64,000 nt of DNA from Octopus sinensis (GCF_006345805.1 NC_043021.1:9238001-9302000); one strand, 5' to 3'. Positions 5,514 to 57,100 are shown, counted from the stretch's first letter. Notes: generated by a model not told the origin, from the letters alone. Translations and numbers: made by a program.

Positions 5514-5582
<69 letters not shown>

Positions 5583-18770: not shown

Positions 18771-18802
<32 letters not shown>

Positions 18803-18950
18803 GTTCTATCTATCTATCTATCTATCGTTCGTTCGTTCGTTCGTTCTATCTATCTATATATATATATGTATATTATGAAGATTATATTTGAGTTTTCTCA
18901 ACACAGGAAACTGTTAGTAGCGCTTTGATACATGTATTGTGACCTTTAAT

Positions 18951-18983
<33 letters not shown>

Positions 18984-20965
18984 GGTAATAATTATTATTA
19001 AAATTATAATTTAGGGGTATCTAAGAGATACCCTAAATTGTGTGTGTGTGTATCTATATATGTTTGTTTTTATGATGTTTTTGATTATGGTTATTGTGTG
19101 TTTATTTTTAGCAGAGGAATTCTCTTTTTGCTTATTCTGGCATTGTCAGCATCTGGAATTTGGCAACCCCTGAGTCTCTAAACTGCTTTTAATTCCCATT
19201 TGATGGTGCTTTCTCGTTGTGTGCCTTATATTTTCTATGTATGAGCCCATATACTGCCTATTGCCCACTCCTGTTGTTTTATTGCCTGTCGTCTCACTTT
19301 AGGGTTAGGGTTAGTGTTGTGCTTTTACAGCCTAACCTTCTAGTCCTTTGGTAGATATTTTCTGTTGTCTGCAACACTGGTTTTAACTAATTTCCTCTCT
19401 TCCAGATGGTCAAAGCTGAAGAAGCGATTCGGTCCGAGGTGAATACTGACCGAAGTATTTCCGTAAAACAATGGTCAGGTGCTGCTACTTCGGTCAATAA
19501 CCAGACACAAATGAGGAACCCTGATAGTCAACATTTTGTCTCTTTGCTCCCACCATCCACCAATGGAAAGGTCCCTACTCTCACTACAGTACCAACGACT
19601 CACACTCGTCCACCTTTCAACAGGTGTAAGTGACCCTTTATGTACTCTTTAGTTTCTCTACCACCTTCTTTCTGTTAAGGCACATGGCTCAGTGGTTAGT
19701 GCGTTGAGCTTACGATCGTGAGGTTGTGAGTTCGAATCCTGGACCGGGCTGCGTGTTGTGTTCTTGAGCAAGACACTTTATTTCACGTTGCTCCAGTTCA
19801 CTCAGCTGTAGAAATGAGTTGCAGTGTCACAGGTGCCAAGCTGTATCGGCCCCTTTGCCTTTCCCTTGGATAACACTGGTAGCGTGGAGAGGGGAGGCCG
19901 GGATGCATGGGCGACTGCTGGTCTTCCATAATCCACCATGCCCGGACTTGTGCCTGGGAGGGTAACTTTCTAGGTGCAATCCCACGGTCAGTCATGACCA
20001 AAGAGGGTCTCAACCTTCTTTCTACTCCCTCTCTTTCCTTTGGCCATGTCTCTCTACCTCTCTTCTTCCTCGCCTCTTCTCATCCTTATTTTTGACCTTC
20101 TCTTTTCCCCCTCCTATTCATTATTCTCATCTTCCATACTTAGCTCTCTCTCCCACTAATCTCTCTTTAGTCTTCTTCTTTCTTCTACTTTCTCTTTAAT
20201 TGCTTACTCTCTCTCTAATCTCTTTTCTCTCCCCCTCTAGTCTATCTCTCTCCCCCTCTAGTCTATCTCTCTCCTCCTCTAGTCTATCTCTCTCCTCCTC
20301 TAGTCTATCTCTCCGCTTCTAGTCTTTCTAGAAATTTTTATATTCTGAAATATTATATCAGACTCTTTTACTTGTTTCAGTCATTTGACTGCGGCCATGC
20401 TGGAGCACCGCCTTTAGTTCAGCAATTCGACTCCAGGACTTATTCTTTGTAAGCTTAGTACTTATTCTATCGGTCTCTTTTGCCGAACCGCTAAGTTATG
20501 GGGACGTAAACACACCAGCATCGGTTGTCAAGCGATGTTTGGTGGGGGACAAACACACACACACACACATATAGACATATATACGACAGGCTTCTTTCAG
20601 TTTCCGTCTACCAAATCCACTCACAAGGCTCTGGTCGGCCCGAGGCTATAGTCGAAGACACTTGCCCAAGGGGCCACGCAGTGGGACTGAACCCGGAACC
20701 ATGTGGCTGGTTAGCAAGCTACTTACCACACAGCCACTCCTACGCCTATAATAATTATGGATGATTAAATTATAACAGTTATTATAGGCGCAGGAGTGGC
20801 TGTGTGGTAAGTAGCTTGCTAACCAGCCACATGGTTCCGGGTTCAGTCCCACTGCGTGGCATCTTGGGCAAGTGTCTTCTGCTATTGCCCCGGGCCGACC
20901 AATGCCTTGTGAGTGGATTTGGTAGACAGAAACTGAAAGAAGCCAGTCGTATATGTGTGTATATA

Positions 20966-21012
<47 letters not shown>

Positions 21013-24000
21013 TTGTGTGTCTGTGTTTGTCCCCCTAGCATTGCTTGACAACTGATGCTGGTGTGTTTACGTCCCCATCACTTAGCGGTTCGGCAAAAGA
21101 GACTGATAGAATAAGTACTAGGCTTACAAAGAATAAGTCCCAGGGTCGATTTGCTCGACTAAAGGCGGTGCTCCAGCATGGCCGCAGTCTAATGACTGAA
21201 ACAAGTAAAAGAGTAAAGTAGAAAGAGTATAGTCCACTCTGCATTGTCGTGCCATTCAAGACATATTTCACAAACAATACACAATGCTTCCAGCAAACTA
21301 CAATACTCTCTCCTTCCATTCCAGTGATTTATAGCTCTTGATATTTTGTCTTCTTGATGCACAGATGATGATGATGATGTTGTTGTTATTAAAGAGAGCG
21401 ATGACGACGATGATGATATCACCAGTGTTTCAGAGCAGTTGTCATCTAAAAGTCCAATTGGTAGCAACAGTAACAATAACAACTACCACCACCACCACCA
21501 CCATAACAGCAGTAGAACTGGAGTCACTGACCTGACAACGCCATCTCTTGGTACCGTTTCTAATCCAATCTCTATTGAAGACCATTGCCCTACTGAACAG
21601 CAGCCACCAACGCCTATTGTCCACTCATCAGCCCCTAATAGAGTAAGTCTAAGGAGAATTTCCTAGCCTTTAGCCATTGAACTGTGACCATGCTGGAGTG
21701 CTTAGTATGTGGGGTTTTGTTTTGTAATTGACCATATTACTTACTGTATTTTAACATGGCGGTGCCCCAGCATGGCCACAGCTTGTGAGCTGAAACTAGA
21801 TAAAATAAAATAAATGAAATAAACGTATAAGGAACCCCCCCCCCTAATTTTTAGGGCTTAAAATTTGGAAAAAAGGTTTTGTAAGGGATTATAATACTAT
21901 CCATGTAAGAAACTCCCGTATTTTTCAACCTAATTTTTTGAGTAAAAAAAGGGTTCCTTGTACTCATTAAAGTGCTTAGTATGTGGGGTTTTCTTTTGTT
22001 ATTGACCATATTACTTACTGTATTTTAACATGTATAAGAAACCCCCTAATTTTTAGGGCTTAAAAATTTGGAAAAAAGGCTTTGTAAGAGATTATAATAC
22101 TATCCATGTAAGAAACTCCCGTATTTTTCAGCCTAATTTTTTGAGTAAAAAAAAGGGTTCCTTGTACTCATTAAAGTGCTTAGTATGTGGGGTTTTGTTT
22201 TGTAATTGACCATATTACTTAATGTATAAGAGACCCCCTAATTTTTAGGGCTTAAAAATTTGGAAAAAAGGCTTTGTAAGGGATTATAATACTATCCATG
22301 TAAGAAACTTCCGTATTTTTCAACCTAATTTTTTGAGTAAAAAAAGGGTTCCTTGTACACATTAAAGTGCTTAGTATGTGGGGTTTTGTTTTGTAATTGA
22401 CCATATTACTTACTGTATTTTAACATGTATAAGGAACCCCCTAATTTTTAGGGCTTAAAAATTTGGAAAAAAGGCTTTGTAAGAGATTATAATACTATCC
22501 ATGTAAGAAACTCCCGTATTTTTCAACCTAATTTTTTGAGTAAAAAAAGGGTTCCTTGTACACATTAAGATCTGGTGTTTCTGTACAGTTTTATTATATT
22601 GAGCTCTGTTTGTTGAACATTTTGATGCGAAGGGACACAACACCCCGGTTCTCATGCACACGCACCCTCACTCACAGACAGCAAGCTGAATTGTTAGCAT
22701 GCCAGACAAAATGCTTTGTGGCATTTTGTCCAACTTTACGTTTTGAGTTCAAATTCTGCTGACGTCAGCTTTGCTTTTCATTATTTTGGGGTTGAGGAAA
22801 TAAGTACCAGTTACACACTGGGGTCAATGTTATTAATTTATCCCCTCCCACCACATTTCAGGCCTTGTGCCTATAATAGAAAGGATTATTATCACACTGA
22901 GTAAAATTCTTAGCGGCATTTCGTCTCTTTACGTTCTGAGTTCAAATTCTGCCAAGGTCGACTTAGTCTTTCTTCTTTTCAGGGTCATTAAAATAAGTAC
23001 CAGTTACACACTGGAGTCAATGTTATTGACTTATCCCCTCCCCCAAAATTGCAGGCCTTGTAGAAAGGATTATTATTATGGAAAATGCCACAGATAATTT
23101 ATTTTAACTTTCATTTATCATGTACTATAAAGATAATCAATTATTATTATTATTACTCTTACTCTTTTACTTGTTTCAGTCATTTGACTGCGGCCATGCT
23201 GGAGCACTGCCTTTAGTCGAGCAAATCGACCCCGGGACTTATTCTTTGTAAGCCCAGTACTTATTCTATCGGTCTCTTTTGCCGAACCGCTAAGTGATGG
23301 GGATGTAAACAAACCAGCATCGGTTGTCAAGCTATGCTAGGGGGGACAAACACACACACACACATATACATATATACGACAGGCTTCTTTCAGTTTCCGT
23401 CTACCAAATCCACTCACAAGGCATTGGTCAGCCCGGGGCTATAGCAGAAGACACTTGGCCAAGATGCCACGCAGTGGGACTGAACCCGGAACCATGTGGT
23501 TGGTAAGCAAGCTACTTTAACACACAGCCACTCCTGTGCCTATATAGCCACTCCTGCGCCTATTATTGTTATTATTATTATTATTATTATTACTATTGTT
23601 ATTATTAAGGCCACAAGCTGGCAGAATTGTTAGCGCTCCAGGTGAAATGCTTAGTGGTATTTTGTCTGTTGCTACATTCCAAGTTCAAATTCCACCGAGG
23701 TCGACTTTGTTTTTCATCCTGTCAGGGTTGATAAATTAAGTACCAGTTGAGTACTGGGGTTGAAGCCATTATTATTATGATATATGAGTTCAAATTCTGC
23801 CGAGGTTGGCTTTACCTTTCATCCTTTCAGGGGTCAATAAAATAAGAACCAATCGAGTACTGGGGGTTGGGGTAATTGACCCCCTCTATCCCCACAAATT
23901 GCTGATTTTCTGCCAAAATTTGAAATTATAGTCACGATGTATTATGAATAATTTATTGTAGATTTTATTGAACTTTATTTATTTTTCTTGCAGAAATCCT

Positions 24001-27000
24001 TGTCTGGTTCTGTTTGTGAATCTCCTGCTCCTGAAAACAGCACTACAAAGACTGGTTCCATTGGCCAGAAATCTTCTACTTCACATTCCGATGTCTTTCT
24101 GAAATCATTCATGCGTAACAATAGCGCTAATTCCAGTCGCCAGCGTCCTCATCCGTCTGATTCTGTCCACGAGGCAGACGACACAGCAGATGGTACATGG
24201 TTTGTTGCTGACTCAGATGATGAAAATGGTACCACTCCTGAGACAGGTTGCCATTCTACATCAAAGCCAAGTCTCAATTTCTGTGTAGCAGAATCTGACA
24301 GTGAAAATGACATGATTAATGATTCCTGTGCAGATGGTAGCCTGTCAGGAAAGGCTTTAGACAGCACCAAAGGTAGCAGCAGTAAGAATTTCCGTACACC
24401 ACCATCTTTCAAAGGTATGTCTTCTACGGTACCAAGTAGTTCACCAAGAACTGAAGGCAGCAGAGAGGAGGAAATGGAGACTGTTGTGGCAGATAACTCA
24501 TTTGATGGTCAAGCAGAACAACGTTTGGGGCATAACCAAAGCAAGAACACAAAACATGATGGCCAGGGGGACGACAGCGTTGTCAATGTTAAAAAAAAAC
24601 GATTGATATGTCATGTGATAAGTTCTTCAGAAGAGGATTCTGGTTCCGATGACGACGACAATGAAAACAAAAGAGCCAATGATGACGACAGCAGTTTTGA
24701 TGCAGCGCTTCCGAAACTGTCTCAGTGTCGTCGAAAGAGACTCCTCTCATCATCGGAGTCTGATGGTGAAGGAGAGAATGATGTCTCTATTGTCCAAGAA
24801 ATGTTGAATATTTCTGCTAATCCACACGAGTCACTCATCTCTTCCGTCCAAATCCCTTCTGTTAAGGATAAAAGATCGCAACAGTTTAATCGTTCCCAAA
24901 CGGCAGAGTCTCCTAGCCTGTCGGCAGCTGGGAAGGGTCTTTTTGAGGCAAAGCTCAGCGATGCAGATGTGGAAGGCCGCCCATCTGCAGTGGTTAAGAA
25001 CAACAGCTTGGTTGTTTGTGGGGCTGGAGAGAAGTCTGATGGGGTCGGTGAAAGTGTTAAAAGAGAAGAAAATGATGTAGAGGAAGAGGAAGACAGTGAA
25101 GAGGAGGCAGAGGAAGACAGTGAAGAGGAAGAAGACGAGATGGATGTAATAAATAAAAAGAAAAAGGAAATATCAGTAGTAGAGGAAGAAGAAAGTGAGG
25201 AAGAGGAAGAAGAAAGTGAAGACAGTGAGGAAGAAGAAGACAGTGAAGAGGAAGAAGACGAGATGGATGTAATAAATAAAAAGAAAAAGGAAATATCAGT
25301 AGTAGAGGAAGAAGAAAGTGAAGACAGTGAGGAAGAGGAAGACAGTGAAGAGGAGGAAGAAGAAATAGGTATGTCGTTTCTTTATCGTAAGTGAATGATT
25401 TAAAAGAGGTAGGTGGGTGACGAGTCTACAGTTGGTGGTTGCAGGGGTTAGGGGCATCCTGTTCTTCAGCGTTACTATCTTGTGCCCATTGTAACTCAGT
25501 TGTAGTTTAATCCCTTGGCATTTAATCTGGTCATAGCCAGTCCAAATATTCTACCTGTTTTTTTGTTAAATTGACCAGATTTGGCTTCTCACACCTACCC
25601 TACAATGTCATTCTTAAAAATCAAGCAGTCACATCATTGAAATCTTGAAGCTGCAGGGTAATGTGTAATTAACTGAAAACAATGAATAAATAAGCGTTAC
25701 ATTTGTAACAGGATCTGGTATCGGTATCACTGAAAGGGTGTTGATCCGATCCCGTCACATACAATTTAGTTAGATATAACAGACGAAGTCAGGTTATCGG
25801 TGAAAGACAGCAGTTTGTTTATTAATTGTGATGGTGTACGTATATCTGATGGGAAAACGACAGCCGAATCTGTTGTACAGCTTCTTGTTCGTTGGTTGAA
25901 GTGGTTCGATGTCGTCCGCGGCTAAGTCGGTGTGGTTATCAGAGACTACCAATGCACATCTGTTCACGATGGCTGAACGACCAGAGAGAATGATCGAGTT
26001 TAGTGGGCCTTAGGGATCAGTTTCCCGCTCATGCGCATGGGGAAGTAGTCCCATTCTGCGCATGCGCGCTGAACCCTACACAGTAGCATCACTACACATT
26101 TGACAGAATAATCTGAATGCTAAAGCATTCAAATATGAAGGTTGTTCACATTTAGAGATAGAAATTGTAACCATTTTACAGCAAATTGACAAATTTGCAG
26201 ATCTATCAGACCATTGCTTTAACTGCTTTAGTTGTAAAATTAAATCTTTGGTTGGCCTGAGGCTCTAGAAGACACTGGCCCAAGGTGCCATGCTGTGAGA
26301 CTGAACCCAGAACCATGTGGTTGGGAGGCAAACTTCTTTATATTTTAAAATACCCCATAGAAGTGTTCTGTAAAGTCTTTCCAATCGCAGACCTGTGTTG
26401 AATCAATATTTGAAAGTTTTTATTCTTTGTTTTCAATGGAAAAAAAATAATCTCATGTTTATATTTTTTCTGAAGAATTGCCATCTTTTTCCAACGACAA
26501 GAGTGAAGAATTCAACAACTTTGTCAGGGATGCTAGGTAAGTATTTCGTTTTCTCTCAGAAGATTTTTCCCAGCACAACATTTGTCCAACCTTATCTTCA
26601 GTAACTAAAAGACTTAGAGCAGCAAAATAAATTTATGGCCAAGATAATTTATATAATTTAACCTTTAGTATTCAGATGCTTATTTATCCACATTGATAAA
26701 AAATTCGTCGTGCATTGCCTTGTAGTTTTATATCCTGTTGTTTAATAAATAATTTAATGAAGCAAGGGGAAGAAGTATTGGGTTGTCTGGAAAATTTGTG
26801 CCGGTTTATAGTAGCTTACCTTTTGACTTAGTTTAGAACATGGTTGAGTACATAAAATAGGATTTGACTATACCTCCATTCAGAGCACAGTTTAAGCTAT
26901 CTTTTCGTGGAAGAAGGTCTATGTTTCTATAACCTGTGTTAATTCTGTAACCCTTTAAATTGGAAGATAAGAAAGTTCATTTTCGGCACTTGATGCTTTG

Positions 27001-34037: not shown

Positions 34038-34366
34038 TTCGTTCTAGCACACGGTCTCAGATCAGGTCACTTGCTATGCAAGTACATCTCCGTACTATAT
34101 ATATATATATATATATATGTATAAAGTGAGGTTACTCTCTCTCTGGCTGCTCCAAGTTTCATCTTAGTACAATAATAATAATAATCACCTAATTGACATT
34201 CAGAAAATTTTCGTCTTCTTGGTAAATTCAATTGTTAGATTTGCAACCATTGTTACTATAGTATAATAGTGGTCTTCCATATTTTCACCAATTCCAATCT
34301 GATCCTAAATTGGAAACATTTATTGTTGTTGTTGCTGTTGTTTGAACCTGGACATCTGAAACTACT

Positions 34367-34501
34367 TCAGTACTGGACCCTGTTCGGTTGGTTATTACTG
34401 ATCAACGCTGTGTTATCTCCAACAAAATTCAGTTGGAAACAGAGACAGTTGATCTCGTTGCATCCTGGATCACAGCTGCAGTCACACTTGCAGTTTCCAA
34501 A
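34367..34501 (-). CDS. Cys-rich membrane protein exon 5 (terminal)
   Basis: ctttttctttctccag|TTT; FGNCKCDCSCDPGCNEINCLCFQ...QY*. Confidence 0.85.
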   Translation of the reverse strand, partial: FGNCKCDCSCDPGCNEINCLCFQLNFVGDNTALISNNQPNRVQY

Positions 34502-37500
34502 CTGGAGAAAGAAAAAGTCAGAGATAGAATGGTGAATAAGAACACTGTGTAACGATTTTATTTATTAGGTTGTCCCAAAAGTTCGTAAACACTTGTGAAA
34601 ATTGAATTTGTACTTGCCAAGTACTAACAAAAATTATTCCTCAAAATAAAGACCATTATTTTCCAAGACTTTCTACGAACTTTTGGGACAACCTTATATT
34701 TATTTATTAATTTTTTTTTTTTTTTTGGGGGGGGGTCTTTGGTCAGTGAGCGTTATTTCCTATTTGCTTCTATCTAGAAATCAAAGGAAATCACTAAAGG
34801 GGATTGGGCTGTTACAACCCTGTGCTGGTTCCACATGAAAGGCACCTGTGCCAGCACCACACAAAGTGCACCTGTGTTGGCACCAGATAATAGAATCCGT
34901 GCCAGAACTACATAACAGCGCTCATCCAGGTGCCATGTAAAATGCTTGGCTTTAGGAAGGGCATCAAGCCTTAGAGACCAAGCCAAGTCAGACTGGAACG
35001 TGGTGCAGCTCTCTGGCTTGCCATCATGGACAACAGATGTTAAAGGATGATGATGAGGGTGAGAAAATCAGACAGGGAAAGACAGGATAAAGCAAGTTAC
35101 ATGATGTTAATAATAATAATAATAATAATAATAAACCAGTTGAATTACTTACACCACATGTGTTACCAGAACCTGCACCAGCACAACATTGGCATAGAAT
35201 TATATCGACACAGTCCATTTGCTGAAAAGTGGAAAGAAGATAGATATATATATATGTATATAGATAGATAAGACCATATACACGCATGCACACTTCACAA
35301 ACACACATATGGAGACACACATCTATACATAACAGACAGACGTACATAGTCACACAAATCCATACACATAGACACACTCAAGCATGCACACTCTCTCTCT
35401 ATCCGAAGTCGACTCTCGGTCACTCGTTGGATCAGTGTCCTCCAGTCAGTTCTATCCTGGGCCGCTTCTTTCAGATTGGCTATGTCCATTCCAGTATCAC
35501 TCTTGATGGTGTCAAGCCAGCGGGTTCTTGGTCGGCCTCTTCCTCTCTTGCCACTGACCATTCCGAGCATGATGTCCTCCTCCAGGGATTTTCTCCGCAT
35601 AATATGACCGAAATATGCCAATCTATGCTTGGTGATCCTAGCTTCTAGATACAAAGTGATATTTACAATACTGATATCTAGTTGTATCAACATCTCACAG
35701 AGAAAAAGAGGATTCTGCAAATCATCTGAAATTGGAAATAGGTTAATAGAGGTAATATTTATCCCCACTTAACCCTTTCGTTACCAACCCAGCTGAAACC
35801 GGCTCTGGCTTTAAGTACAAATGTCTTGTTTTCATAAGTTTTGAATTAAAATCTTCCCCAAACCTTAGTCACAATTTATGTTCCTAACACTAGCTGAATG
35901 ATAACTAAGTTATTTTACTTAATTCTTTGTTATATTTAAAGTAATTGAAAGAAACACAGAGCATCTCAACAGAAATATGGTAACAAAAGGGTTAAACATG
36001 GAGGCTCAGTTAAAACAAACTATACTGTGGTAGATATCATGAGAGAGACTGTCACATTGCTTCTTGGTGTAAAATGCACTCTTGTTTCTACAGCTGGTGG
36101 GGAGATAAATCTCTGCCATCTCCAGCACCAAGATCATCATATCATGTGATTTCGACCTTGTTTGGTCTCATCAGAGATGGATACTCGACTGCTAGAGATA
36201 GCAGTGACTCATCTTTCCACCAGTAATATATAGAAAATCAGTGCCAGTGAGTTTCTTGAAAGGTATATATATATTAATGATAGAGACAGTATTAATACCA
36301 AGAGATAATATTTCCCCCCCACTTAAATATGGATGTTTTCTTAGAACAATATGAGTGCATTTTGCACCAAAAACCAATATGAGAGTTTCTCTCATGGCAT
36401 CTACTGCAGTATAGTTTGTTCTAACAGAACATCCATGTTTAAGTTGGGATAAATATTACCTCCTGAGAGTAACACTCTCTCTGTTGCTATTATATTTTAA
36501 TATACAGGGATTTTTCGACTTGCGCAAGTAATTGGGGGATGCGCAATTCGAAATTCGCGCAAGTCGAGTATCAAATATTGTTATCAATTACTCAAACACA
36601 ATATTTTTACTTTATGTATATTTGAAATGATGGATAGATAACAAGATAACAGACAAGGCAATGCAACCATGGATAATAAATATCTTTACAACAAGCGCAA
36701 GTCGAGAATACAACTCGCGCAACCTGAACACTCGGTACAAAAGTTGGCTCGCACAAGTTGGGGAATCCCTGTATATTTAACAGGGTTAGTAGAGAGAAAA
36801 AGAGTTATCTTACCTTCCTTTGGGGACAGCAGGCATCTAAGCATTTTTCCACACTCGGCACAGAACAAGTGCACTTCTCTGAGATAGCCAGGCAGCACTT
36901 GATACAATTGTTGTCAGGCTTGGACCCACAGATAGTACACTCAGAACAGACACCTCGCTTCTGTTTAGAAAAAGTGAAAGGTCAGAGTTTAGAGAAAGTA
37001 AGGAAACAAAAGTACTCACTCCCCTTTCTTTTTCAATAGGGGTATCCAGGTATCTACTCTACAGCAAGACACCTATCTCTGTGCCTATGTACCTTTAATC
37101 CTCGAACTACCCCAAAGCCACACCCCTCACAGCTATGTAGACACCTAAAACAATCAAGAAAAGCATGGTAGATGTCAGCAAGTCATACTCGATATATTTC
37201 TTTATTGCCCACAAGGGGCTAAACATAGAGAGGACGAACAAGGACAGATAAAGGGATTAAGTCGATTACATCGACCCCAGTGCGAAACTGGTACTTTTAT
37301 TTATCGACCCCAAAAGGATGAAAGGCAAAGTCAACCTCGGCGGAATTTGAACTCAGAACGTAATGACAGACAAAATACCTATTTCTTTATTACCCACAAG
37401 GGGCTAAACAAGGACAGACATAGGTATTAAGTCAGTTACATCGACCCCAGTGCGTAACTGGTACTTAATTTATCGACCCCAAAAGGATGAAAGGCAAAGT

Positions 37501-40500
37501 CGACCTCGGCGGAATTTGAACTCAGAATGTAACAGCAGATGAAATATGGCTACACATTTCACCCGGCGTGCTAACGTTTCTGGCAGCTCGCCGCCTTAAG
37601 TCATACTCAATAGGTACAGGCATGACAGTGTGGTAAGAAGCTTGCTTTCCAACTACATGGTTCTGGTTTCAATCCCACCGTGTGGCATCTTAAGTAACTG
37701 TCTTCTACTATAGCCTCAGGCTGACTGATCAAAGCCTTGTGAGTGGGTTTGGTAGACAGAAACTGAAAGAAGCCTGTTATATAGGAGCACTCTGTCGGTT
37801 ACGAGGATGAGGGTCCCAGTTGATCCGATCAATGAAACTGCCTGCTCGTGAAATTAATGTTCAAGTGGTTGAGCATTCCACAGACATGTGTACCCTTAAC
37901 GTAGTTCGCAAGGAGATTCAGCATGATACAGAGTGTGACAAGACTGGCCCTTTTTTGAAATACAGGTACTGCTCCTTTTTTGCCAGCTGAGTGGACTGGA
38001 GCAATGTGAAATAAAGTGTCTTGCTCAAGGACACAACATGTCGCCAAGAATTGAACTCACAATCTTACGATTGTGAGCCAAATATCTCAACCACTAAGCC
38101 ACGCATCTTCACACACACACACATATCATCATCATTGCTTAATGTCAACCTTCCATACTAGCATGGGTGGTACAGTTTCACAAAAGCTAGCCAATCAGAA
38201 GCTTGCACCAGACATCTGTGACTGTTTTGGCAGGATTTTTACAGCTGGATGCCTTTCCTGACACCAACCACTCAGCAGAGTGGACTGTATGTATGCATGT
38301 ATGTATATATGTATGTATGTATGCATGTATGTATGTCTGTATGTATGTCTGTATGTATGTATGTATGTATGCATGCATGCATGTATGTATGTATGCATGC
38401 ATGCATGCCTGTATGTATGTATGTGTGTGTGTGTGTGTGCGTGCGTGCGTAACCAGCCCATTTATGAATACCCCTCATTCATTGGACAATAAACCTTGCT
38501 TGTGAAGACCCATGGAGGCAAGTAAAATTAAAATCAAAATTGCTGACGTGGCTGACAACAGTACCGCCTGATTGGCATTCATGCCAGTGGAATGTTAAAA
38601 GCGCATCCGAATGTGGGGTGTAACCGGCCCATTTACGAATACCCCTCATTCATTGGACAATGATCTTTGATTGCGAAAACCTATTGAGGCAAGTGTAAAC
38701 AAATCAAAATCGCTGACATGGCCAGTGATAGTACCACCTTATTGGCACTTGTGCCAGTGGAATGCTAAAAGAAGCATATCCGAGCATGATCGTTGCCAGA
38801 GCCACGGATTGGCTCCTGTGCTGGCGACACGTCAAAAGCACCATTCAAGCATGATTGTTGCCAGCATCACCTTACCGACAGGTGCCGGTGGCACATGAAA
38901 AACAACATTCGAGCATGGTCGTTGCCAGTGCCACCAGACTGGCTCCTGTGCAGGTAGCATAAAAAAACACCTCTTGAGCGTGAGCATGGTCATTGCCAGA
39001 ACTGCCTGACTGGCCCTCGTGCCGGTGGCATGTAAAAAGCACCCACTACACCCTCGGAGTGGTTGGCATTAGGAAGAGCATCCAGCTGTAGAAACTATGC
39101 CAGACCAAACTGAGCCTGGTGCAGCCTCTGGTTCACCAGTCCTCAGTCAAACCGTCCAACCCATGCCAGCATGGAAAGCAGACATTAAACGATAATGATG
39201 ATGATGATGATATCTAGAGATTAAATTTAATTTTGTCTCACCGTAAGACATTGCTGAATAATGGTGAATATGATGATAACCAAGAGGTAGATACCAATAG
39301 CAATGGACAGGATGGATGCTGGGTGGTAAATGAGTGTGACTGGTGTTGGCTGTGGAGTCGACATAATAGGCACCATCTGGAAAATTCCAAAAAGAATTAA
39401 AATATTTAGCAAATGTGAAGTAAATAATGGCGGTGCCCCAGCATGGCCACAGCTCGTGAGCTGAAACTAGATAAAATAAAAAAAAAAATTTTTTAAATAA
39501 ATATAATTTTATTGATTCAGAAAATAAAAACATTTAACAACAACAACAATAATAATAACTGCTTGTCAGTTGCTTGAACCTTAACCAGTTGAGCATGTCC
39601 CTTAGTGGCTGATGATATGTGCATCTCTGATCACGAACAGAAGTAGTTGGGGAGCATCATAGCCGTATGTTGAGAGGAATTCTTTGGGGTTTCAATAACT
39701 CAGCCCCAGAAACATAGGCATTTCGTTCATCATCCTTCAACAACCCTCATTCAGGGACTTTTTGAGTGGGATGGGCTACTTGACCTGAAGAAAATTCTGA
39801 GTCTCACCTGCAAAGTCATGCATTGTTTATCTCAGTATGAGATCACCATGTCACGCACATATGGTTGTGATGCATGTGCCTGGTGCACTCTTATCAAATG
39901 AGAGGTCATGATGGGTATATTGGACTTTGTATACTTGTACCCCAGTGTCGCTCTGATGGCATACACTGCTCTCTCATCTAATAATAATAATAACAATAAT
40001 CCTTCCCACTATAGGCACAAGACCTGCAATTTTGGAGAAGAGGCTAGTTGGTTATCTTTATCTTTTATCTTTTACTTGGAGCACCGCCTTTAGTCAAGCA
40101 AATCTACCCTGAGACTTATTCTTTGTAAGCCCAGTACTTATTCTATCGGTCACTTTTTGCCGAACCGCTAAGTGACGGGGACACAAACACACCAGCATCG
40201 GTTGTCAAACACAGACATACACATATATACGACAGGCTTCTTTTAGTTTCCGTCTACCAAATCCACTCACAAGGCTTTGGTCGGCCCGAGGCTATAGCAG
40301 AAGACACTTGCCTAAGGTGCCATGCAGTGGGACTGAACCCAGAACCATGTGGTTGGTAAGCAAGCTACTTACCACACAGCCACTCCTGCGCCTATTGACT
40401 TTAATAATATAATGCATCTAATAATAATAATAATAATAATAATTGATTCTTGTGTATGCATATACATGCAAAGATGTATGTACATTTAAGTGTAGGTATA

Positions 40501-41889
40501 TGTATGTATATGTGTGTCTATTTATATTTATAACTTAACCTTATGTACTTTCTAAAATCTCTGATGAAGCCTAGAGAAACACCCAAGTACCTCAATTTCA
40601 TTTACTAATTACTTCAGTCTACTAGAGAGATGAAGGTAGAATGAGGTATTTTACCTCTTGGCCGAATCAACTGTAAGATATTTTCACAATTTCTATTCAT
40701 CATCATCATCGTTTAACGTTGATATTTTAATAATTACTGGTATCTTTATATATTATATATGTAAAGCATAATATGTTATACATGTATGTATATTGTTGTA
40801 ATTGGCCTTTTATTAAATAAATAAATAAATACCACCTATTGATCCAAGGCGATGGGTTCAATCCTCAAGATTTACTTGGGCTGATAGCAGGGCCACCTCG
40901 AAAGCATTATTGGCCCCTGGACAAAATATGCTCAAGAGCCGCTCTAAGAACAATCACAGCATACACAGATTTGCATTAGGGCCCTAGAACCATGGGGCCC
41001 AAGGCCAAGTTTACAGTGTGTCTATGCATCCAGACGGCACTGGCTGATAACTACATCTCTACTGAACGCGATAACAGCTTTTCGATATAATAATGAAATT
41101 ATTGTATACAGTGCTCAGGTGCACCACAACTTGTCAGACAGTGCATGTAAAGTACATGCAGTAATGTACAAATGTCTGGAAAGCGAACAGCATATGAGTC
41201 AGATACATGCTTGTGTGTGTATGGAGGGGAGAAAATCAAGTGTAGTGTTGGCGAATCTCAGGAAGCATGGAAGTTTTGAAGGATGCAGTGCTCCGACAAC
41301 TAACAAATGATGCCGGCAGTTTGTTCCATGCTTCAGCAACTCTCAGCGTGAAAAAATGTTTCCTAAAGTCATGGGAGCTGTGCTGTTTTCTGACTTTGTA
41401 AATATGTCCTCAGGTGTTAGACGGGTGGAGTTCGAAAAGGTGCTCAGAGTTATTGTTTGTAAGATGGTTGATAATTTTATGGGTGTCTCCATATATCAGT
41501 AATGACCGGACACTGAACAAGATCCTGTACAACGGTTTCGTCTCAGTTGGAAGAAGAAACGAAGGATCTTAAGTATCCTAGTACATGGCAAGTACTTTAG
41601 TTTAACGACCTAGCAGGATTCGAACTCAGAACATAAAGACACATAGTTAAATATAACATTTAGCCGGTTTTTGCGGAGAAGGGAGTGTGTATAATAGTCG
41701 TCGATTACATCAGCCCCGGTATTTAAGAGAACTTTATCAACACCGTAGAGGGATAACAGGTGTTATCGATCTCAGTATGATTCGAACTCAAAAAATAAAG
41801 TGACGCGAAAAAACAAAAATTAAAGTTTCACAACTTCGTCTTACCATAGTACCAAAGAAAACATCTTCGCTGTCCTCTGTCCAAAACAT
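34367..41889 (-). CDS. Uncharacterised 176-aa single-pass membrane protein with cysteine-rich tail (5 coding exons)
   Basis: complement(join(34367..34501,35153..35221,36814..36960,39242..39376,41845..41889)) = 531 nt. All four introns are GT-AG, phase 0, with polypyrimidine acceptors. MFWTEDSEDVFFGTM-MVPIMSTPQPTPVTLIYHPASILSIAIGIYLLVIIIFTIIQQCLT-KRGVCSECTICGSKPDNNCIKCCLAISEKCTCSVPSVEKCLDACCPQRK-QMDCVDIILCQCCAGAGSGNTCG-FGNCKCDCSCDPGCNEINCLCFQLNFVGDNTALISNNQPNRVQY*. AATAAA (minus strand) at 34319..34324. Confidence 0.85.
34565..34696. mobile_element. Mariner-type MITE
   Basis: TIR TTAGGTTGTCCCAAAAGTTCGTA / TACGAACTTTTGGGACAACCTTA; TA flanks. Confidence 0.8.
35153..35221 (-). CDS. Cys-rich membrane protein exon 4
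   Basis: ccacttttcag|CAA...GGT|gtaagt; QMDCVDIILCQCCAGAGSGNTCG. Confidence 0.85.
35392..35650 (-). mobile_element. RTE/BovB-like LINE 3' end
   Basis: RLAYFGHIMRRKSLEEDIMLGMVSGKRGRGRPRTRWLDTIK..AAQDRTDWR. Confidence 0.88.
35773..35991. mobile_element. piggyBac-type MITE family B
   Basis: TTAA-CCCTTTCGTTACC..GGTAACAAAAGGG-TTAA. Confidence 0.85.
35996..36438. repeat. Fold-back element flanked by TTAA, about 95-bp diverged arms
   Basis: TTAA-ACATGG...CCATGT-TTAA. Confidence 0.75.
36135..36179 (-). ncRNA. Type-I hammerhead motif, core intact
   Basis: minus strand: catct-CTGATGA-gacc-aaacaa-ggtc-GAAA-TCA-CA-TGA-TA|tgatg; perfect stem II; one mismatch at the first stem-I pair. Confidence 0.68.
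36505..36771. mobile_element. Tc1/pogo-type MITE
   Basis: TA-CAGGGAT...ATCCCTG-TA; internal CGACTTGCGC repeats. Confidence 0.75.
36814..36960 (-). CDS. Cys-rich membrane protein exon 3
   Basis: tttttctaaacag|AAG...AAG|gtaaga; 11 Cys in 49 aa. Confidence 0.87.
38287..38450. repeat. (TATG)/(TG) microsatellite
   Basis: Direct reading. Confidence 0.93.
38450..39212 (+). mobile_element. Retroposon family S2, long diverged copy
   Basis: Extra 5' modules plus the S2 core and tail. Confidence 0.72.
39242..39376 (-). CDS. Cys-rich membrane protein exon 2 (TM helix)
   Basis: ttttccag|ATG...ACG|gtgaga; hydrophobic ILSIAIGIYLLVIIIFTII. Confidence 0.85.
40068..40394 (-). mobile_element. SINE family S1
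   Basis: Matches S1. Confidence 0.82.
40554..40682 (+). ncRNA. Degenerate hammerhead-like motif with long stem II
   Basis: aaaatct-CTGATGA-agcctagag...(inner tacctca/tgaggta)...ctcttggcc-GAATC-AACT-GTA|agatatt; A15.1 mutated. Confidence 0.45.
40888..41042. mobile_element. hAT MITE
   Basis: CAGGGCC..GGCACTG; TSD GCTGATAG/GCTGATAA. Confidence 0.65.
41050..41475 (-). mobile_element. CR1-like LINE 3' end
   Basis: HKIINHL..T*GHIYKVRKQHSSHDFRKHFFTLRVAEAWNKLP..SFKTS. Confidence 0.78.
41845..41889 (-). CDS. Cys-rich membrane protein exon 1
   Basis: In-frame TAA directly before the ATG; MFWTEDSEDVFFGTM; donor ATG|GTAAGA. Confidence 0.6.
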
Positions 41890-42501
41890 TTACAAGAATT
41901 ACATCGTCTATTAAGAATTTTGTGAGAGGGATGACTTAACAATGAACAACAGGGGCCATCACAATGAACAACAATGTTCAAAGTTGATCCATCAATGTTC
42001 AAAATTTGTTCTTAGAAACAATGTTTGATCACGTGACTAAGTTCTGGTTTCTAACGACTGGAAACGTCACGAATTTCTGTATTTTAAAAACATTCTAAAA
42101 AAGACTTTTCTCCCATATTTTTCTCATCAAAAAATTAAAAGAAAATTTTTCCTTTTCGAATTATCTTCTTATATGTTCCCAATGAATTAAAAAAAAAAAT
42201 TTCTCCTTTTATAAACTTATTTACTTCCTTTATGTTTATTTTCGTCATCGATTTCGTACTTCCGGTTTACTCCGAAGAACCACAAGGCTTTTTGCTGTGT
42301 ATTTACTTTCGTTTGTTGATTAATCACTAATTACTAAATAATTACCAATTATTTTGAAATTTACAATTAATTTAATTCCATAAGAGTATCATAGATCGAT
42401 TCATTGTCGAAACAAAAACAAGGAAAAACAACAACAAAGTGAATGTTGTTTATTTCACTGTGAAATAATAAATAACAATTAAAAGAGAAGAGACAAAAAA
42501 A
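41890..42501. promoter_or_regulatory. Probable bidirectional promoter (Cys-rich gene / ESS2)
   Basis: 612 bp between divergent start codons, no recognisable TE; ETS-like ACTTCCGG at 42258..42265 and E-box TCACGTGA at 42029..42036. Confidence 0.55.
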
Positions 42502-52458
<9,957 letters not shown>

Positions 52459-53915: not shown

Positions 53916-54126
53916 TCAAGTTGGCTGTTGGTTCTGAATTTGTGATTGTAATTTTTTCATAGCAGCTTCATCTTGTTGTGAAATAGCTGTGAGTTTTTTA
54001 CCAATTCTGTCATGAACATCGAGGTACTTGGCCACACATCGGTCTAAACAAACTGCTTCACCTTTGTTGAGTTCGGCATCTTTGTATCGAGGTGGAATGC
54101 ATTTCTTCTGACAGGCACTGGTCATT
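53916..54126 (-). CDS. TIMM10: TIMM10 coding exon 2
   Basis: cttttgcag|A ATG ACC; CQKKC and CLDRC; TGA at 53916. Confidence 0.96.
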
Positions 54127-57100
54127 CTGCAAAAGATCAAACAAAAAAGAACTATGAGTGCATTGCATTTTATAGCAGAAACAACTGCAAGCCAATGAAA
54201 TTCATTGCATAATTACTAGTTCCCTTGTCATTTACATAATCTGGGCAGCGAGCTGGCAGAAACGTTAGCACGCCGGGCAAAATGCGTAGCCGTATTTCGT
54301 CTGCCGTTAGGTTCTGAGTTCAAATTCCGCCGAGGTCGACTTTGCTTTTCATCCTTTCGGGGTCGATAAATTAAGTACCAGTTATGCACTGGGGTCGATA
54401 TATATTTCTTTACTACCCACAAGAGGTTAAACATAGAGGGGACAAACAAGGACAGACAAAGGGATTAAGTCGATTACATTGACCCAGCGCGAAACTGGTG
54501 CTTTATTTATCGACCCCGAGAGGATGAAGGGCAAAGTCGACCTCGGCGGAATCTGAACTCAGAACGCAGCGGCAGCCGAAATACCGCTAAGCATTTCGCC
54601 CGACGTGCAAACAATTCTGCCGTTTAGCCCCTTGTGGGTAGTAAAGAAATATATAATCTGGGTTCACTTAGAGTGGAGGGAAGCTGTGGAAGAGGGAGAC
54701 CCAGAAAGGCATGGGATGAAGCACTGAAGGCCGATCTCAAAATGCCGAACCTTATGAAAGAGATGTTAGAGAACTGAGATACGTGGTGCATTGTTGAACT
54801 CGAGAAGACCTATCCACCACAACATAAAGGACCGTAACTAAAGAGCCTAGGGCTTTTTGTCTGATGCTCTACCGATTCTTCTAATCCACTGCCTATAGGA
54901 TAAAATGGCCAAATGTGACCAGATAAAATTGTTGGACTGTCATGGCACTAGGACATGGTTTCAAATATAGTGCAATGTTTGTTATTTTCTTATGTTATGC
55001 TATTTCCGAGACCTATTGAGTCGAGTACATCAACATCAGCAACATCAATATCAAATCAAATGGAAATTGTAGTTGTGAGTACCTTGCCAGTAGCACATAA
55101 AAAGCACCATCTGAACATGGCCGATGCCAGCCCCGTCTGGCACCTGTGCTGGTAGCACATAAAAAGCACCCACTACACTCACGGAGTGGTTGCTGTTAGG
55201 AAGGGCATCCAACTGTAGAAACACTGCCAGATCAGACTGGAGCCTGGTGCAGCCTTCTGGCTTCCCAGACCCCAGTTGAACCGTCCAACCCATGCTAGCA
55301 TGGAAAACAGACGTTAAACATTGATGATGATGATGAATGTTTTGTGTGTTTCTGGGACCAAAAGACATAGTCCCACAATTGGCAGTTTACCTGAACTATG
55401 GTGGAGCAGACAAGTACCAACGTAGAAGGCCCCTCATTTATAAGTTCCTTGAATTGTAAAAAATTGAAACATCATCAACATCATTATCACCATTTAACCC
55501 TTTAGCATTCAGATTATTTTGTCAAATGTAATGCTTATTTATTCACATTTTAAATTTACCATACATTATCTTCCGTGCCGGTGGCATGAAAAAACCACAA
55601 TTCGATCATGATCGTTACCAGCGTCGCCTTACTGGCACTTGTACTGGTGGCACGTGAAAAAGCATTTGAGTGAGGTCATTGCCAGTGCTGCTGGACTGGC
55701 TCCTGTGTAGGTGGCACATAAAAAACACCATTGAGCGTGGCCATTGCCAGTACCGCCTGACTGGCCCTCATGCCGGTGGCACGTAAAAGCACCCACTACA
55801 CTCTCAGAGTGGTTGGCATTAGGAAGGGCATCCAGCTGTAGAAACTGCCAGATCAAGATTGGTGCAGCCATCTGGTTCGCCAGACCTCAGTCAAATCGTC
55901 CAACCCACGCTAGCATGGTAAGCGGACGTTAAACAATGATGATGATCTTATAACTTTGAGATTTCAATGATGTGATTGTTTAATTTTAGGATGACATTAT
56001 AGAATAGGTGTGAGAGGCCTGATCTGGTCAGAACATAAAACAAGTAGAATATTCGGTTAGTTTGAATACTAAAAGGGTTACACTGGTCATATCCAGCCCA
56101 AATATTCTGCCTGTTTATAATCAAACTGGCTAGATCAAGCCCATCACACCTATCCTACAATGTCATATTAAAAATAAACAATAGGCACAGGAGTGGCTGT
56201 GTGGTAAGTAGCTTGCTAACCAACCACATGGTTCCAGGTTCAGTCCCACTGCGTGGCATCTTGGGCAAGTGTCTTCTGCTATAGCCCCAGGCTGACCAAT
56301 GTCTTGCGAGTGGATTTGGTAGACGGAAACTGAAAGAAGCCTGTCGTATATATATATATGTATGTTTGTGTGTCTGTGTTTGTTCCCCAGCATTGCTTGA
56401 CAACCGATGCTGGTGTGTTTACATCCCCGTCACTTAGCGGTTCGGCAAAAGAGACCGATAGAGTAAGTACTGGGCTTACAAAGAATAAGTCCCAGGGTCG
56501 ATTTGCTCAACTAAAGGCGGTGCTCCAGCATGGCCGCAGTCAAATGACTGAAACAAGTAAAAGAGTAATAACATAATTGAAATCTTGAAGCTATGAGATA
56601 ATGCTTGCTTAATTCAAACACAATGTAGATAAATAAGCATTACATTTGACAGAATCTGTTGGGCTACCCAAGGAGTGCACTGTTCCCCAGTATTTGTTTG
56701 ACGTAACTTGTATGACATGATGTCCTTCCTAACACCAACCACTTTACAGTATGTACTGGGTAGTTTTTTTTGAGCCACCAGCAATAGTGAGTTACCATGG
56801 ACCTTATAAAACTACATACCCTGAATGGGGAGGGGAAGTTTATGCTGGGAGAATAAAAAATGGTGGAAGTTTATACTAGAATAAAAAATGGTGGGAGGAA
56901 GTTTATGCTAGGAGAATAAAGAATGGAGGGGTAAAATATGAGAGAAAGGGCTATGATGTTTTTTTTCTATAGAAACCACTTTACAGTAAGAACTGGGTGT
57001 ATTTTTATCATACCATCTATAATTTATAAATTATGTGAGGATGAATGGCTTGTAAGATCATGAAGATAATGCATGTATGGGATTTTTCACCTGTGGACCT

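What the first reader, a model, noticed from the sequence alone, without database searches (positions are those of the whole stretch)
34367..41889. Hidden 5-exon gene for a single-pass membrane protein with a metallothionein-like Cys-rich tail
Seen: five short minus-strand exons with strong splice sites, all phase 0, join into a 176-aa ORF that the ORF track does not report. It has a short N-terminus without an obvious signal peptide, one hydrophobic helix (ILSIAIGIYLLVIIIFTII) followed by KR, then 24 Cys in about 96 aa (CC, CxC, CxxC, CKCDCSC). I recognise no family. Inference: the basic residues after the helix suggest N-out/C-in topology, so the Cys tail would be cytosolic. That fits Zn/Cu/Cd binding at a membrane or heavy palmitoylation better than disulfides. 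It is head-to-head with ESS2 and has an ATG-TAA start-stop element 9 nt upstream of the start codon.
Basis: partly seen in the sequence, partly recalled or inferred. Interest (0 to 1): 0.85.

Follow-up and report, generated by a model that had tools for sequence, protein, structure and literature searches.

The report
Conserved membrane protein with cysteine-rich tail
The five-exon octopus gene is real but already annotated; it belongs to an unstudied family of small membrane proteins with a cysteine-packed tail, found from tardigrades to mammals, whose human counterpart appears to lie in the 16p11.2 deletion/duplication region.

Summary
Five minus-strand exons, all phase 0 with GT/AG introns, join into a 176-aa ORF with one transmembrane (TM) helix and 24 Cys.

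The gene is not hidden. The window is Octopus sinensis chromosome CM016883.1, and the product is identical to RefSeq XP_029651345.1 (LOC115224561 isoform X1).

It is under strong purifying selection: dN/dS is 0.037 against O. bimaculoides. The same four junctions are spliced out in a Sepia RNA contig.

A profile search found 59 clusters of relatives. They include molluscs, annelids, spiders, tardigrades, a ray, reptiles and mammals. NCBI names the mammalian ones "LOC112694756 homolog". They share motifs and two phase-0 intron positions.

The family has no Pfam model, no solved relative and no functional paper that I could find. It shows no metallothionein similarity beyond composition. Its resemblance to the MDFI cysteine domain is not significant.

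Charge distribution, glycosylation sequons and variable Cys parity support N-out/C-in topology. The Cys domain is therefore cytosolic.

Its chemistry (metal-thiolate fold, S-acylation or both) is inferred, not shown.

Verdict: a known gene model of an uncharacterised conserved family. Moderate interest.

The parts
41845..41889 (-). Coding exon 1 (M1-M15, acidic N-terminus). Poorly conserved; the first coding exon holds only 2-4 codons in spider, dolphin and Sepia.
   Evidence: Followed by the donor gtaaga. The RefSeq X1 product is identical.
39242..39376 (-). Coding exon 2 (M16-T60): S/T/P-rich ectodomain segment plus the whole TM helix. It is a symmetric phase 0/0 exon. Annotated isoforms skip it in O. 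vulgaris and in mammals.
   Evidence: The Sepia exon is the same size, 135 nt.
39257..39313 (-). Core of the TM helix (I37-I55). The AF2 helix spans 34-62 and is the only confidently modelled part.
   Evidence: maximum Kyte-Doolittle 19-mer score 3.03; pLDDT 84-97.
36814..36960 (-). Coding exon 3 (K61-K109): juxtamembrane KRGxC, CxxCxxC, CC, ExCxC and PSxxxCLDxCCP motifs.
   Evidence: The phase-0 boundary lies at the same residue in spider and dolphin.
35153..35221 (-). Coding exon 4 (Q110-G132): MDCVDIILCQCC block, almost invariant in cephalopods.
34367..34501 (-). Coding exon 5 (F133-Y176 plus TGA): CKCDCSC and PGCNEINCLCF motifs and a variable tail.
41899..41904 (-). ATG-TAA start-stop element, 9 nt before the main ATG and in frame with it. 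The upstream ATG at -15 is conserved in octopods.
   Evidence: O. bimaculoides has ATG-TGA; Argonauta has ATG TCT ACC GTA TAA. It is absent from the Sepia and squid-like mRNA contigs. Whether it lies inside the transcript was not shown.
41890..42501 (.). 612-bp bidirectional promoter region shared with ESS2. It holds an E-box (CACGTG, 42035-42030) and an ETS-like AAACCGGAAGT (42268-42258), both conserved in Argonauta.
34319..34324 (-). AATAAA, a candidate polyadenylation signal 43 nt after the stop codon.
   Evidence: Read from the sequence. Not verified by RNA.

Best explanation
This is a real, expressed and already annotated protein-coding gene: Octopus sinensis LOC115224561. It is the octopus orthologue of an unnamed, uncharacterised animal family. 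NCBI labels the mammalian members "LOC112694756 homolog". The mouse member is Gm57854.

Shown here:
- The product has a short S/T/P-rich N-terminal segment without a signal peptide.
- It has one long TM helix whose residues are conserved across phyla (LPxxAIVxIAxGxY...RxCLxxRGxC).
- It has a roughly 100-aa domain with about 18 conserved Cys, held in fixed motifs together with conserved Pro, Asp, Glu, Asn and Gly: PSxxxCLDxCCP and PxCxxxNCxCF.

Inferred:
- The helix is a reverse signal-anchor, giving type III topology (N outside or lumenal, C cytosolic). The Cys domain therefore sits on the cytosolic face of a membrane.
- In the reducing cytosol the domain most likely folds around metal ions, probably Zn-thiolate sites.
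- The Cys nearest the membrane (C58, C65) are probably S-acylated.
- Because the TM helix itself is so conserved, the protein probably acts as a small accessory or adaptor subunit of another membrane protein. It is unlikely to be a bulk metal buffer.
- Skipping of the phase-0 TM exon, annotated in both octopus and mammals, would release the same domain as a soluble form.
For: Identity and reality of the gene:
- The product is identical to XP_029651345.1, and the window maps to GCA_006345805.1 CM016883.1.
- dN/dS is 0.037.
- All four introns are conserved in Argonauta.
- A Sepia RNA contig is 100% identical to five colinear genome blocks with exon sizes 135, 147 and about 70 nt, so it is a spliced mRNA.

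Family:
- 59 clusters score E < 1e-3 and 31 score E < 1e-10 in 1.84 billion representatives.
- Members were named in annelids, bivalves, gastropods, spiders, tardigrades, a manta ray, turtles, geckos and many mammals.
- Phase-0 introns lie at CL[TIL]|[KA][RQ]G in octopus, spider and dolphin, and after CCPxx[KQ] in octopus and spider.
- Held-out weak members score z = 12-17 over composition shuffles.

Topology:
- K+R averages 0.28 on the N-flank and 2.15 on the C-flank. Cys number ranges 11-35 in most members (a few probably truncated models have fewer), with parity 36 even and 36 odd.
- Sequon density is 1.36 per 100 aa in the N-segment and 0.35 in the Cys domain.
- AF2 gives one confident helix, residues 34-62.

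Fold-like conservation:
- 18 Cys columns are at least 62% conserved, alongside conserved G63, E88, P95, L101, D102, P106, P144 and N150.
- Residues 100-158 are nearly invariant across cephalopods.

TM-exon skipping: P0006 in O. vulgaris; P0133, P0135 and P0178 in mouse and macaque.
Against: - No experiment or structure bears on metal binding or acylation.
- AF2 models the Cys domain poorly (pLDDT 35-58). That fits a metal-dependent fold, but it equally fits disorder.
- There is no similarity to any metal-binding family in Pfam or the PDB.
- Topology rests on statistical rules only.
- Some bivalve and gastropod members begin MGNxxxS, which resembles an N-myristoylation signal and would favour a cytosolic N-terminus.
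- No RNA data for O. sinensis itself were available. No Logan contig carried the exact octopus product.
- The isoforms are annotation models, not transcripts I verified.
- The human protein sequence itself was not retrieved. The link to LOC112694756 rests on NCBI's orthologue names and on position next to ALDOA.
Confidence: 0.55

Rival explanations
1. The cytosolic Cys domain is mainly a multi-S-acylation platform, as in MDFI/MDFIC, cysteine-string protein or the Sprouty SPR domain. Many Cys would carry fatty acids, pressing the domain onto or into the inner leaflet, where it would regulate a membrane partner. No structural metal would be needed.
For: - The domain is membrane-tethered, so it is within reach of DHHC enzymes.
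- The hydrophobic Cys-containing blocks MDCVDIILCQCC and NCLCFQLNF look like lipidated amphipathic segments.
- A colinear motif resemblance to the MDFI Cys domain exists (CxxCxxC ... CCxCC ... ExCxCxxP ... LDxCC). hhalign gave P = 0.0038 over 42 columns.
- AF2 finds no compact fold.
Against: - The MDFI resemblance is not significant once composition is controlled. z is 1.6-2.25, and 89-198 of 3000 shuffles score as well. hhalign probability is 8.7%, and no Pfam MDFI hit appeared in 73 members.
- Fixed Cys spacing with conserved Pro, Asp, Glu, Asn and Gly over more than 500 million years is more typical of a folded site than of an acylation patch.
- This rival is not exclusive of the main explanation.
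Confidence: 0.3
2. The orientation is the opposite (N-in/C-out, type II). The Cys-rich domain would then be lumenal or extracellular and disulfide-knotted, like a small receptor or ligand ectodomain.
For: - Cys-rich domains with fixed spacing are common outside the cell.
- The octopus protein has an even number of Cys (24).
- Some mollusc members start MGNxxxS, a possible myristoylation signal for a cytosolic N-terminus.
Against: - Positive charges lie after the helix throughout the family (0.28 against 2.15 K+R).
- The N-flank is neutral or acidic.
- Cys parity is 36 even and 36 odd, and the number ranges 11-35.
- Sequons are concentrated in the N-segment, not in the Cys domain.
- The annotated TM-less isoforms would place the same domain in the cytosol.
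Confidence: 0.1
3. It is a membrane-anchored metallothionein: a high-capacity Zn/Cu/Cd buffer or detoxifier at a membrane.
For: About 24% Cys, with CC, CxC and CxxC patterns in a cytosolic domain.
Against: - MT2A scores no better than its shuffles against the family profile (z = 0.15).
- hhalign probability is 0.9%, and no Pfam metallothionein hit was found.
- The domain contains conserved hydrophobic and aromatic residues.
- The strong conservation of the TM helix and of non-Cys residues points to a specific partner rather than bulk buffering.
Confidence: 0.07
4. It is a chance ORF or pseudogene assembled from splice-like sites, with no function.
Against: dN/dS is 0.037. The intron positions are the same in five cephalopods, a spider and a dolphin. 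A spliced Sepia mRNA contig exists. Cross-phylum E-values reach 1e-30.
Confidence: 0.01

Closest known systems
Mammalian "LOC112694756 homolog" proteins (human LOC112694756 in 16p11.2; mouse Gm57854 / NP_001405981.1), plus unnamed relatives in spiders, tardigrades, annelids and other molluscs
   Same: - Same architecture: tiny first coding exon, S/T/P-rich N-segment, conserved TM helix, juxtamembrane RxCLxxRGxC, PSxxxCLDxCCP, and C-terminal PxCxxxNCxCF.
- The same phase-0 intron after the TM exon.
- TM-exon-skipped isoforms are annotated in both mammals and octopus.
   Different: - Identity is only about 30-35%.
- Mammals lack the MDCVDIILCQCC block and the intron that follows it, and they end right after CFEIKLR.
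- Octopus has Q56 where 89% of members have R.
- The neighbours differ: ALDOA and PPP4C in dolphin and human, ESS2 and Tim10 in octopods.
- No member has a described function.
MDFI / MDFIC (I-mfa domain, Pfam PF15316)
   Same: Both have a C-terminal cytosolic domain of 80-100 aa with more than 20 Cys. The motif order looks alike: CxxCxxC, CCxCC, ExCxCxxP, LDxCC, then DCxEI..CxxCC..CF. From my own knowledge, MDFIC is S-acylated and sits in the membrane as a channel accessory subunit, so it is a functional analogue for one rival explanation.
   Different: MDFI has no TM helix. No Pfam hit was found for 73 family members. hhalign probability is 8.7%. The profile score is not clearly above composition shuffles (z = 1.6-2.25). 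Homology is not established.
Metallothioneins (Pfam PF00131 and related)
   Same: High Cys content with CC, CxC and CxxC patterns, in a reducing compartment.
   Different: Metallothioneins are small, soluble proteins without conserved hydrophobic or aromatic residues. There is no similarity beyond composition (z = 0.15; hhalign probability 0.9%; no Pfam hit).
N-terminally anchored cytosolic metal-cluster proteins such as mitoNEET/CISD1 (an analogy of architecture only, from my own knowledge)
   Same: One N-terminal TM anchor holds a small Cys-dependent metal domain on the cytosolic face of a membrane.
   Different: There is no CDGSH motif and no sequence or Pfam relationship. The metal, if any, is unknown.

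Membership tests
Unnamed LOC112694756 / Gm57854 family | Significant full-length profile similarity to members from other phyla | tested here: met
   59 clusters at E < 1e-3 and 31 at E < 1e-10, matches spanning TM plus Cys domain; mammalian members at E = 1e-40 to 1e-49 against the family profile; held-out members score z = 12-17 over shuffles.
Unnamed LOC112694756 / Gm57854 family | Single N-proximal TM helix with the conserved LPxxAIxxIAxGxY face, followed by R/QxCLxxRGxC | tested here: met
   Octopus has HPASILSIAIGIYLLVIIIFTIIQQCLTKRGVC. I37 is 92% conserved, Y45 95%, L59 88%, G63 93% and C65 92%.
Unnamed LOC112694756 / Gm57854 family | Signature motifs PSxxxCLDxCCP and PxCxxxNCxCF in the C-terminal domain | tested here: met
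   Octopus has PSVEKCLDACCP and PGCNEINCLCF. The first motif (loosened pattern) is present in 66 of 86 members. NCxC[FC] is present in 65 of 86.
Unnamed LOC112694756 / Gm57854 family | Shared intron positions (phase 0 directly after the TM exon, and phase 0 after CCPxx[KQ]) | tested here: met
   Octopus CLT|KRGVC, spider CLI|ARGIC, dolphin CLL|AQGCC. Octopus CCPQRK|QMDC, spider ICPAKQ|RVNC. In dolphin the second intron lies two residues later.
Unnamed LOC112694756 / Gm57854 family | The human LOC112694756 protein itself aligns with the octopus protein | not tested
   The human sequence was not retrieved. The link rests on NCBI's orthologue names for primate and other mammalian members. It also rests on gene order: TLCD3B, LOC112694756, ALDOA in human (PMC11354020), matching this gene, ALDOA, PPP4C in dolphin.
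Metallothionein | Match to a metallothionein profile, or similarity beyond Cys composition | tested here: not met
   No Pfam hit at E <= 10 for 73 members. hhalign probability is 0.9%. MT2A against the family HMM gives z = 0.15, and 1166 of 3000 shuffles score as well.
Metallothionein | Binds several metal ions through thiolate clusters | not testable with these tools
   Needs recombinant protein with ICP-MS and spectroscopy.
MDFI / I-mfa domain (PF15316) | Match to the MDFI profile | tested here: not met
   No PF15316 hit in 73 members at E <= 10. The human MDFI sequence used as control hits PF15316 at 4e-55.
MDFI / I-mfa domain (PF15316) | Remote homology by profile comparison, controlled for composition | tested here: inconclusive
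   hhalign gives P = 0.0038 but probability 8.7% over 42 columns. Against shuffles z is 1.6-2.25, an empirical p of about 0.03-0.07.
Other Cys-rich membrane-associated families (Sprouty PF05210, CYSTM PF12734, PLAC8 PF04749, Shisa) | Match to the family's Pfam profile | tested here: not met
   None appears among the 22 weak families listed for 73 members at E <= 10. The listed hits are weak chance matches, several of them to TM regions (CD20, ECSCR, Mid2 and others).
Start-stop (minimal uORF) regulatory element | An AUG directly followed by a stop codon, lying inside the 5' leader, and conserved | tested here: inconclusive
   ATG-TAA is present at -15. O. bimaculoides has ATG-TGA. Argonauta has a 4-codon uORF from the same ATG. 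It is absent in the Sepia and squid-like mRNA contigs. The transcription start site in octopus is unknown, so its presence in the mRNA was not shown.

The most novel reading that the evidence does not exclude
The octopus gene and its relatives may define an undescribed animal domain family: a type III membrane protein whose conserved TM helix and cytosolic 18-Cys module act as a metal- or lipid-dependent accessory subunit of a conserved membrane machine. Alternative skipping of the TM exon would serve as an ancient switch between anchored and soluble forms. The human member would then be an overlooked protein-coding gene inside the 16p11.2 BP4-BP5 copy-number region.
Probability: 0.3. Interest if true: 0.7.

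Novelty: already known. Interest (0 to 1): 0.45.

Why it matters
The gene model is not new, so the "hidden gene" claim adds nothing to octopus annotation.

What deserves attention is the family. It is a small membrane protein conserved across several animal phyla, from tardigrades, spiders, annelids and molluscs to mammals. It has a distinctive TM helix and Cys module, no Pfam model, no structure and no functional paper that I could find. Automatic naming wrongly labels members as keratin-associated or sperm proteins.

Its human counterpart, LOC112694756, is listed between TLCD3B and ALDOA in the 16p11.2 BP4-BP5 interval, whose deletion and duplication cause neurodevelopmental and metabolic phenotypes. 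In the papers I found it appears only in gene and expression lists.

The chemistry of the Cys domain and the identity of its membrane partner can be tested directly with standard methods.

Tried and rejected
- **Pfam.** I scanned the octopus protein, ten relatives and all 73 aligned members. Only weak chance hits appeared, several of them to TM regions.
- **PDB sequence search.** Two family profiles gave only chance hits, E >= 0.48.
- **AlphaFold2.** With 5 sequences mean pLDDT was 41.7, and with 73 sequences 55.0. Only the TM helix was confident. Foldseek against the PDB returned nothing, as expected for such a model.
- **Metallothionein relationship.** Rejected.
- **MDFI relationship.** It looked attractive by eye and by hhalign P-value, but it did not survive composition-preserving shuffles. 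I keep it as a lead only.
- **Octopus RNA contigs.** None was on record for the exact 176-, 161- or 131-aa octopus products. Only genome records were found. The junction evidence therefore comes from Sepia.
- **Third homology search.** Using a non-mammalian alignment to name more invertebrate members, it returned only 7 proteins. It added tardigrades and nothing else.
- **Literature.** I searched by locus names, accessions and peptide strings. Only gene and expression lists turned up. AC093512.2 / ENSG00000285043 appears in 16p11.2 papers, but I could not show that it is the same gene, so I do not use it.
- **tRNA scan of the window.** None found.

Full report
**What is in the sequence**

On the minus strand, five segments join into a 531-nt CDS: 41889-41845, 39376-39242, 36960-36814, 35221-35153 and 34501-34367. 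Each length is a multiple of three. Each of the four introns begins with GT and ends with AG after a pyrimidine tract.

The product is 176 aa. It has an acidic N-terminus and a Ser/Thr/Pro-rich stretch. The hydrophobic segment ILSIAIGIYLLVIIIFTII occupies residues 37-55, followed by QQCLT-KR. All 24 Cys lie between C58 and C153.

ATG-TAA sits at 41904-41899, 9 nt before the start codon and in frame with it. ESS2 starts at 42502 on the other strand, 612 bp away. An ESS2 exon at 49146-49601 hits Pfam Es2.

**The gene is not hidden**

The exact 176-aa product is on record on Octopus sinensis chromosome CM016883.1 (GCA_006345805.1), which places the window there. It is identical to RefSeq XP_029651345.1, "uncharacterized protein LOC115224561 isoform X1".

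A second RefSeq isoform of 161 aa starts at the first codon of exon 2.

The O. vulgaris annotation has the same coding exons at 100% identity. It also holds two models that join exon 1 directly to exon 3, removing the TM helix in frame (P0006 and P0008).

Orthologues are annotated in three other cephalopods:
- O. bimaculoides, 98% identical.
- Argonauta hians, 65% identical.
- Sepia (Acanthosepion) pharaonis.

**It is a functional gene**

Between O. sinensis and O. bimaculoides there are 19 synonymous and 3 non-synonymous differences. This gives dS 0.196, dN 0.007 and dN/dS 0.037.

Argonauta keeps all four introns at the same codons, in phase 0, with GT/AG. It also keeps the Tim10, ES2, this-gene order. 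The window holds a Tim10/DDP exon at 53916-54140.

In Sepia, a Logan contig from run ERR4031017 is 100% identical to five colinear blocks of the genome, spread over 15.9 kb. The internal blocks are 135, 147 and about 70 nt, the sizes of octopus exons 2-4. This is a spliced mRNA and gives junction-level RNA evidence for the orthologous introns.

I could not find RNA contigs for the octopus itself.

**It belongs to a conserved but unnamed family**

A profile of the cephalopod proteins, searched against 1.84 billion representatives, gave 59 clusters at E < 1e-3 and 31 at E < 1e-10. Most matches cover both the TM helix and the Cys domain.

Members that could be named come from these groups:
- Annelids: Capitella, Paralvinella.
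- A bivalve and a gastropod: Saccostrea, Nucella.
- Spiders: Trichonephila, Oedothorax, Stegodyphus, Argiope and others.
- Tardigrades: Paramacrobiotus, Hypsibius.
- A manta ray, turtles and geckos.
- Many mammals.

NCBI calls many of the mammalian ones "uncharaterized LOC112694756 homolog". Others carry evidently automatic names such as keratin-associated protein 10-x or sperm mitochondrial-associated cysteine-rich protein. The mouse entry is Gm57854 (NP_001405981.1).

In a dolphin the gene lies immediately upstream of ALDOA and PPP4C. Papers on 16p11.2 list human LOC112694756 between TLCD3B and ALDOA in the BP4-BP5 interval (PMC11354020). I did not retrieve the human protein itself.

**Shared anatomy**

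The family consensus is M...P...LPxxAIVxIAVGxYLLL...RxCLLxxGxC..C..C.K....CC..CAExCD..PS...CLDxCCP.......C.CC....P.C.C....C.C..P.C...NCLCFEI.

Eighteen Cys columns are at least 62% conserved. So are G63, E88, P95, L101, D102, P106, P144 and N150, and the helix residues I37, Y45 and L59.

Intron positions are shared. The intron after the TM exon is phase 0 at the same residue in octopus (CLT|KRGVC), spider (CLI|ARGIC) and dolphin (CLL|AQGCC). The next intron is shared by octopus and spider.

Models that skip the TM exon exist in mouse, macaque and other mammals (for example MD|AQGCC..., P0133), just as in O. vulgaris.

**Topology**

Across 72 members, K+R in the 15 residues before the helix averages 0.28. 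In the 15 residues after it, the average is 2.15. The N-flank is neutral to acidic.

The N-segment is short, has no Cys, and carries N-x-S/T sequons about 4 times more densely than the Cys domain (1.36 against 0.35 per 100 aa).

The number of Cys after the helix ranges from 11 to 35 in most members, with a few probably truncated models lower. It is even in 36 sequences and odd in 36. That does not fit a fixed set of disulfides.

Together with the long hydrophobic segment and the lack of a signal peptide, this supports a reverse signal-anchor: N-terminus outside or lumenal, Cys domain cytosolic. This is inference from established topology rules, not a measurement. A few mollusc members begin MGNxxxS, which could instead be myristoylated.

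**What the Cys domain is not**

- No Pfam family matches any of the 73 members at E <= 10, apart from weak chance hits, several of them to TM regions.
- PDB sequences give only chance hits.
- AlphaFold2 with 73 sequences models only the helix with confidence. Mean pLDDT is 55 overall and 35-58 in the Cys domain. Foldseek finds nothing.
- Human MT2A scores no better than its own shuffles against the family profile: z = 0.15, hhalign probability 0.9%.
- The Cys domain of human MDFI shows an eye-catching colinear motif pattern and an hhalign P of 0.0038 over 42 columns, but a probability of only 8.7%.
  - Against 3000 composition-preserving shuffles, its z is 1.6-2.25.
  - Held-out true family members reach z = 12-17.
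  - I therefore treat MDFI as a functional analogue and an unproven lead, not as a relative.

**Most likely mechanism**

Shown: a conserved single-pass membrane protein with a conserved helix and a conserved Cys module.

Inferred:
- The module faces the cytosol, where it cannot be held by disulfides.
- It is therefore stabilised by metal-thiolate sites (Zn most likely), by S-acylation, or by both. The juxtamembrane C58 and C65 are the most likely acylation sites.
- The cross-phylum conservation of the helix and of non-Cys residues suggests binding to a specific partner rather than bulk metal buffering.
- TM-exon skipping would give a soluble version.

I put about 0.55 on this package. The alternatives are:
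- Mainly an acylation platform: 0.3 (overlaps the main reading, so the figures are not additive).
- A lumenal disulfide domain: 0.1.
- A metallothionein-like buffer: 0.07.

**The start-stop element**

The upstream ATG at -15 is conserved in octopods. O. bimaculoides has ATG-TGA. Argonauta reads ATG TCT ACC GTA TAA, ending right at the main ATG. It is absent from the Sepia and squid-like mRNA contigs.

Whether the octopus transcript starts upstream of it is unknown, so a regulatory role is only possible.

**Literature**

Searches by locus names, accessions and peptide strings found only 16p11.2 gene lists and expression tables, and nothing on function.

**Verdict**

The "hidden gene" and "no family" claims are not supported. 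The topology is supported by indirect evidence, and the chemistry is untested.

The gene model is already known. The family is uncharacterised and worth a modest follow-up, mainly because of its breadth and the position of its human member.

Noticed in passing
window 41890-42501: The 612-bp region between this gene and ESS2 looks like a bidirectional promoter. An ETS-like AAACCGGAAGT (42268-42258) and an E-box within TCACGTGATCAAACA (CACGTG at 42035-42030) are conserved between Octopus and Argonauta. Two TCACGTGA motifs also lie upstream of the Sepia ORF in contig L002.
   Followed up: partly
window 42502-52458 (+ strand): ESS2 exons. The first coding exon starts at ATG 42502, and the ORF at 49146-49601 hits Pfam Es2 at 1e-13. 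The ESS2 head-to-head arrangement is conserved in O. vulgaris, O. bimaculoides and Argonauta.
   Followed up: partly
window 53916-54140 (- strand): An exon of a Tim10/DDP-family small Tim protein (Pfam zf-Tim10_DDP, 1.2e-17). The same Tim10, ES2, Cys-rich gene order occurs in Argonauta (L008).
   Followed up: partly
window 23988-25394 (+ strand): A 468-aa open exon, very acidic and Ser-rich with repeated EEEEDSEEEE blocks, and no Pfam hit. It probably belongs to the large tail-to-tail neighbour, annotated with a 1445-aa product in O. vulgaris and a 1615-aa product in Argonauta.
   Followed up: no
window 35295-35768 (- strand, intron 3 of the gene): A 157-aa ORF containing GRGRPRTRWLDTIKSD...DRTDWR. 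From my own knowledge this looks like the C-terminal tail of a LINE-type retrotransposon ORF. It has no Pfam hit.
   Followed up: no
window 1987-2454, 16860-17282, 46863-47330, 55051-55368, 62774-63169; also about 38700-39200 in intron 2 of the gene: Many copies of one dispersed repeat that reads through as ...[53 protein letters not shown]... in either orientation. It has no Pfam hit. A tRNA-like SINE-looking element lies at about 40230-40390 in intron 1, but ARAGORN calls no tRNA in the window.
   Followed up: no
L009 (O. vulgaris) 3001-16653; P0008: One O. vulgaris model ends ...NTALITEL instead of ...NTALISNNQPNRVQY, and the gene range extends about 5.5 kb beyond exon 5. This implies an alternative 3' exon spliced from a donor inside exon 5.
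   Followed up: no
L011 (dolphin) 10001-21581; proteins P0125, P0128, P0160, P0163: Several mammalian annotations fuse this small gene with the downstream ALDOA into one "fructose-bisphosphate aldolase A" model of 478-547 aa. These are either read-through transcripts or mis-joined models. Many orthologues are misnamed keratin-associated protein 10-x or SMCP.
   Followed up: no
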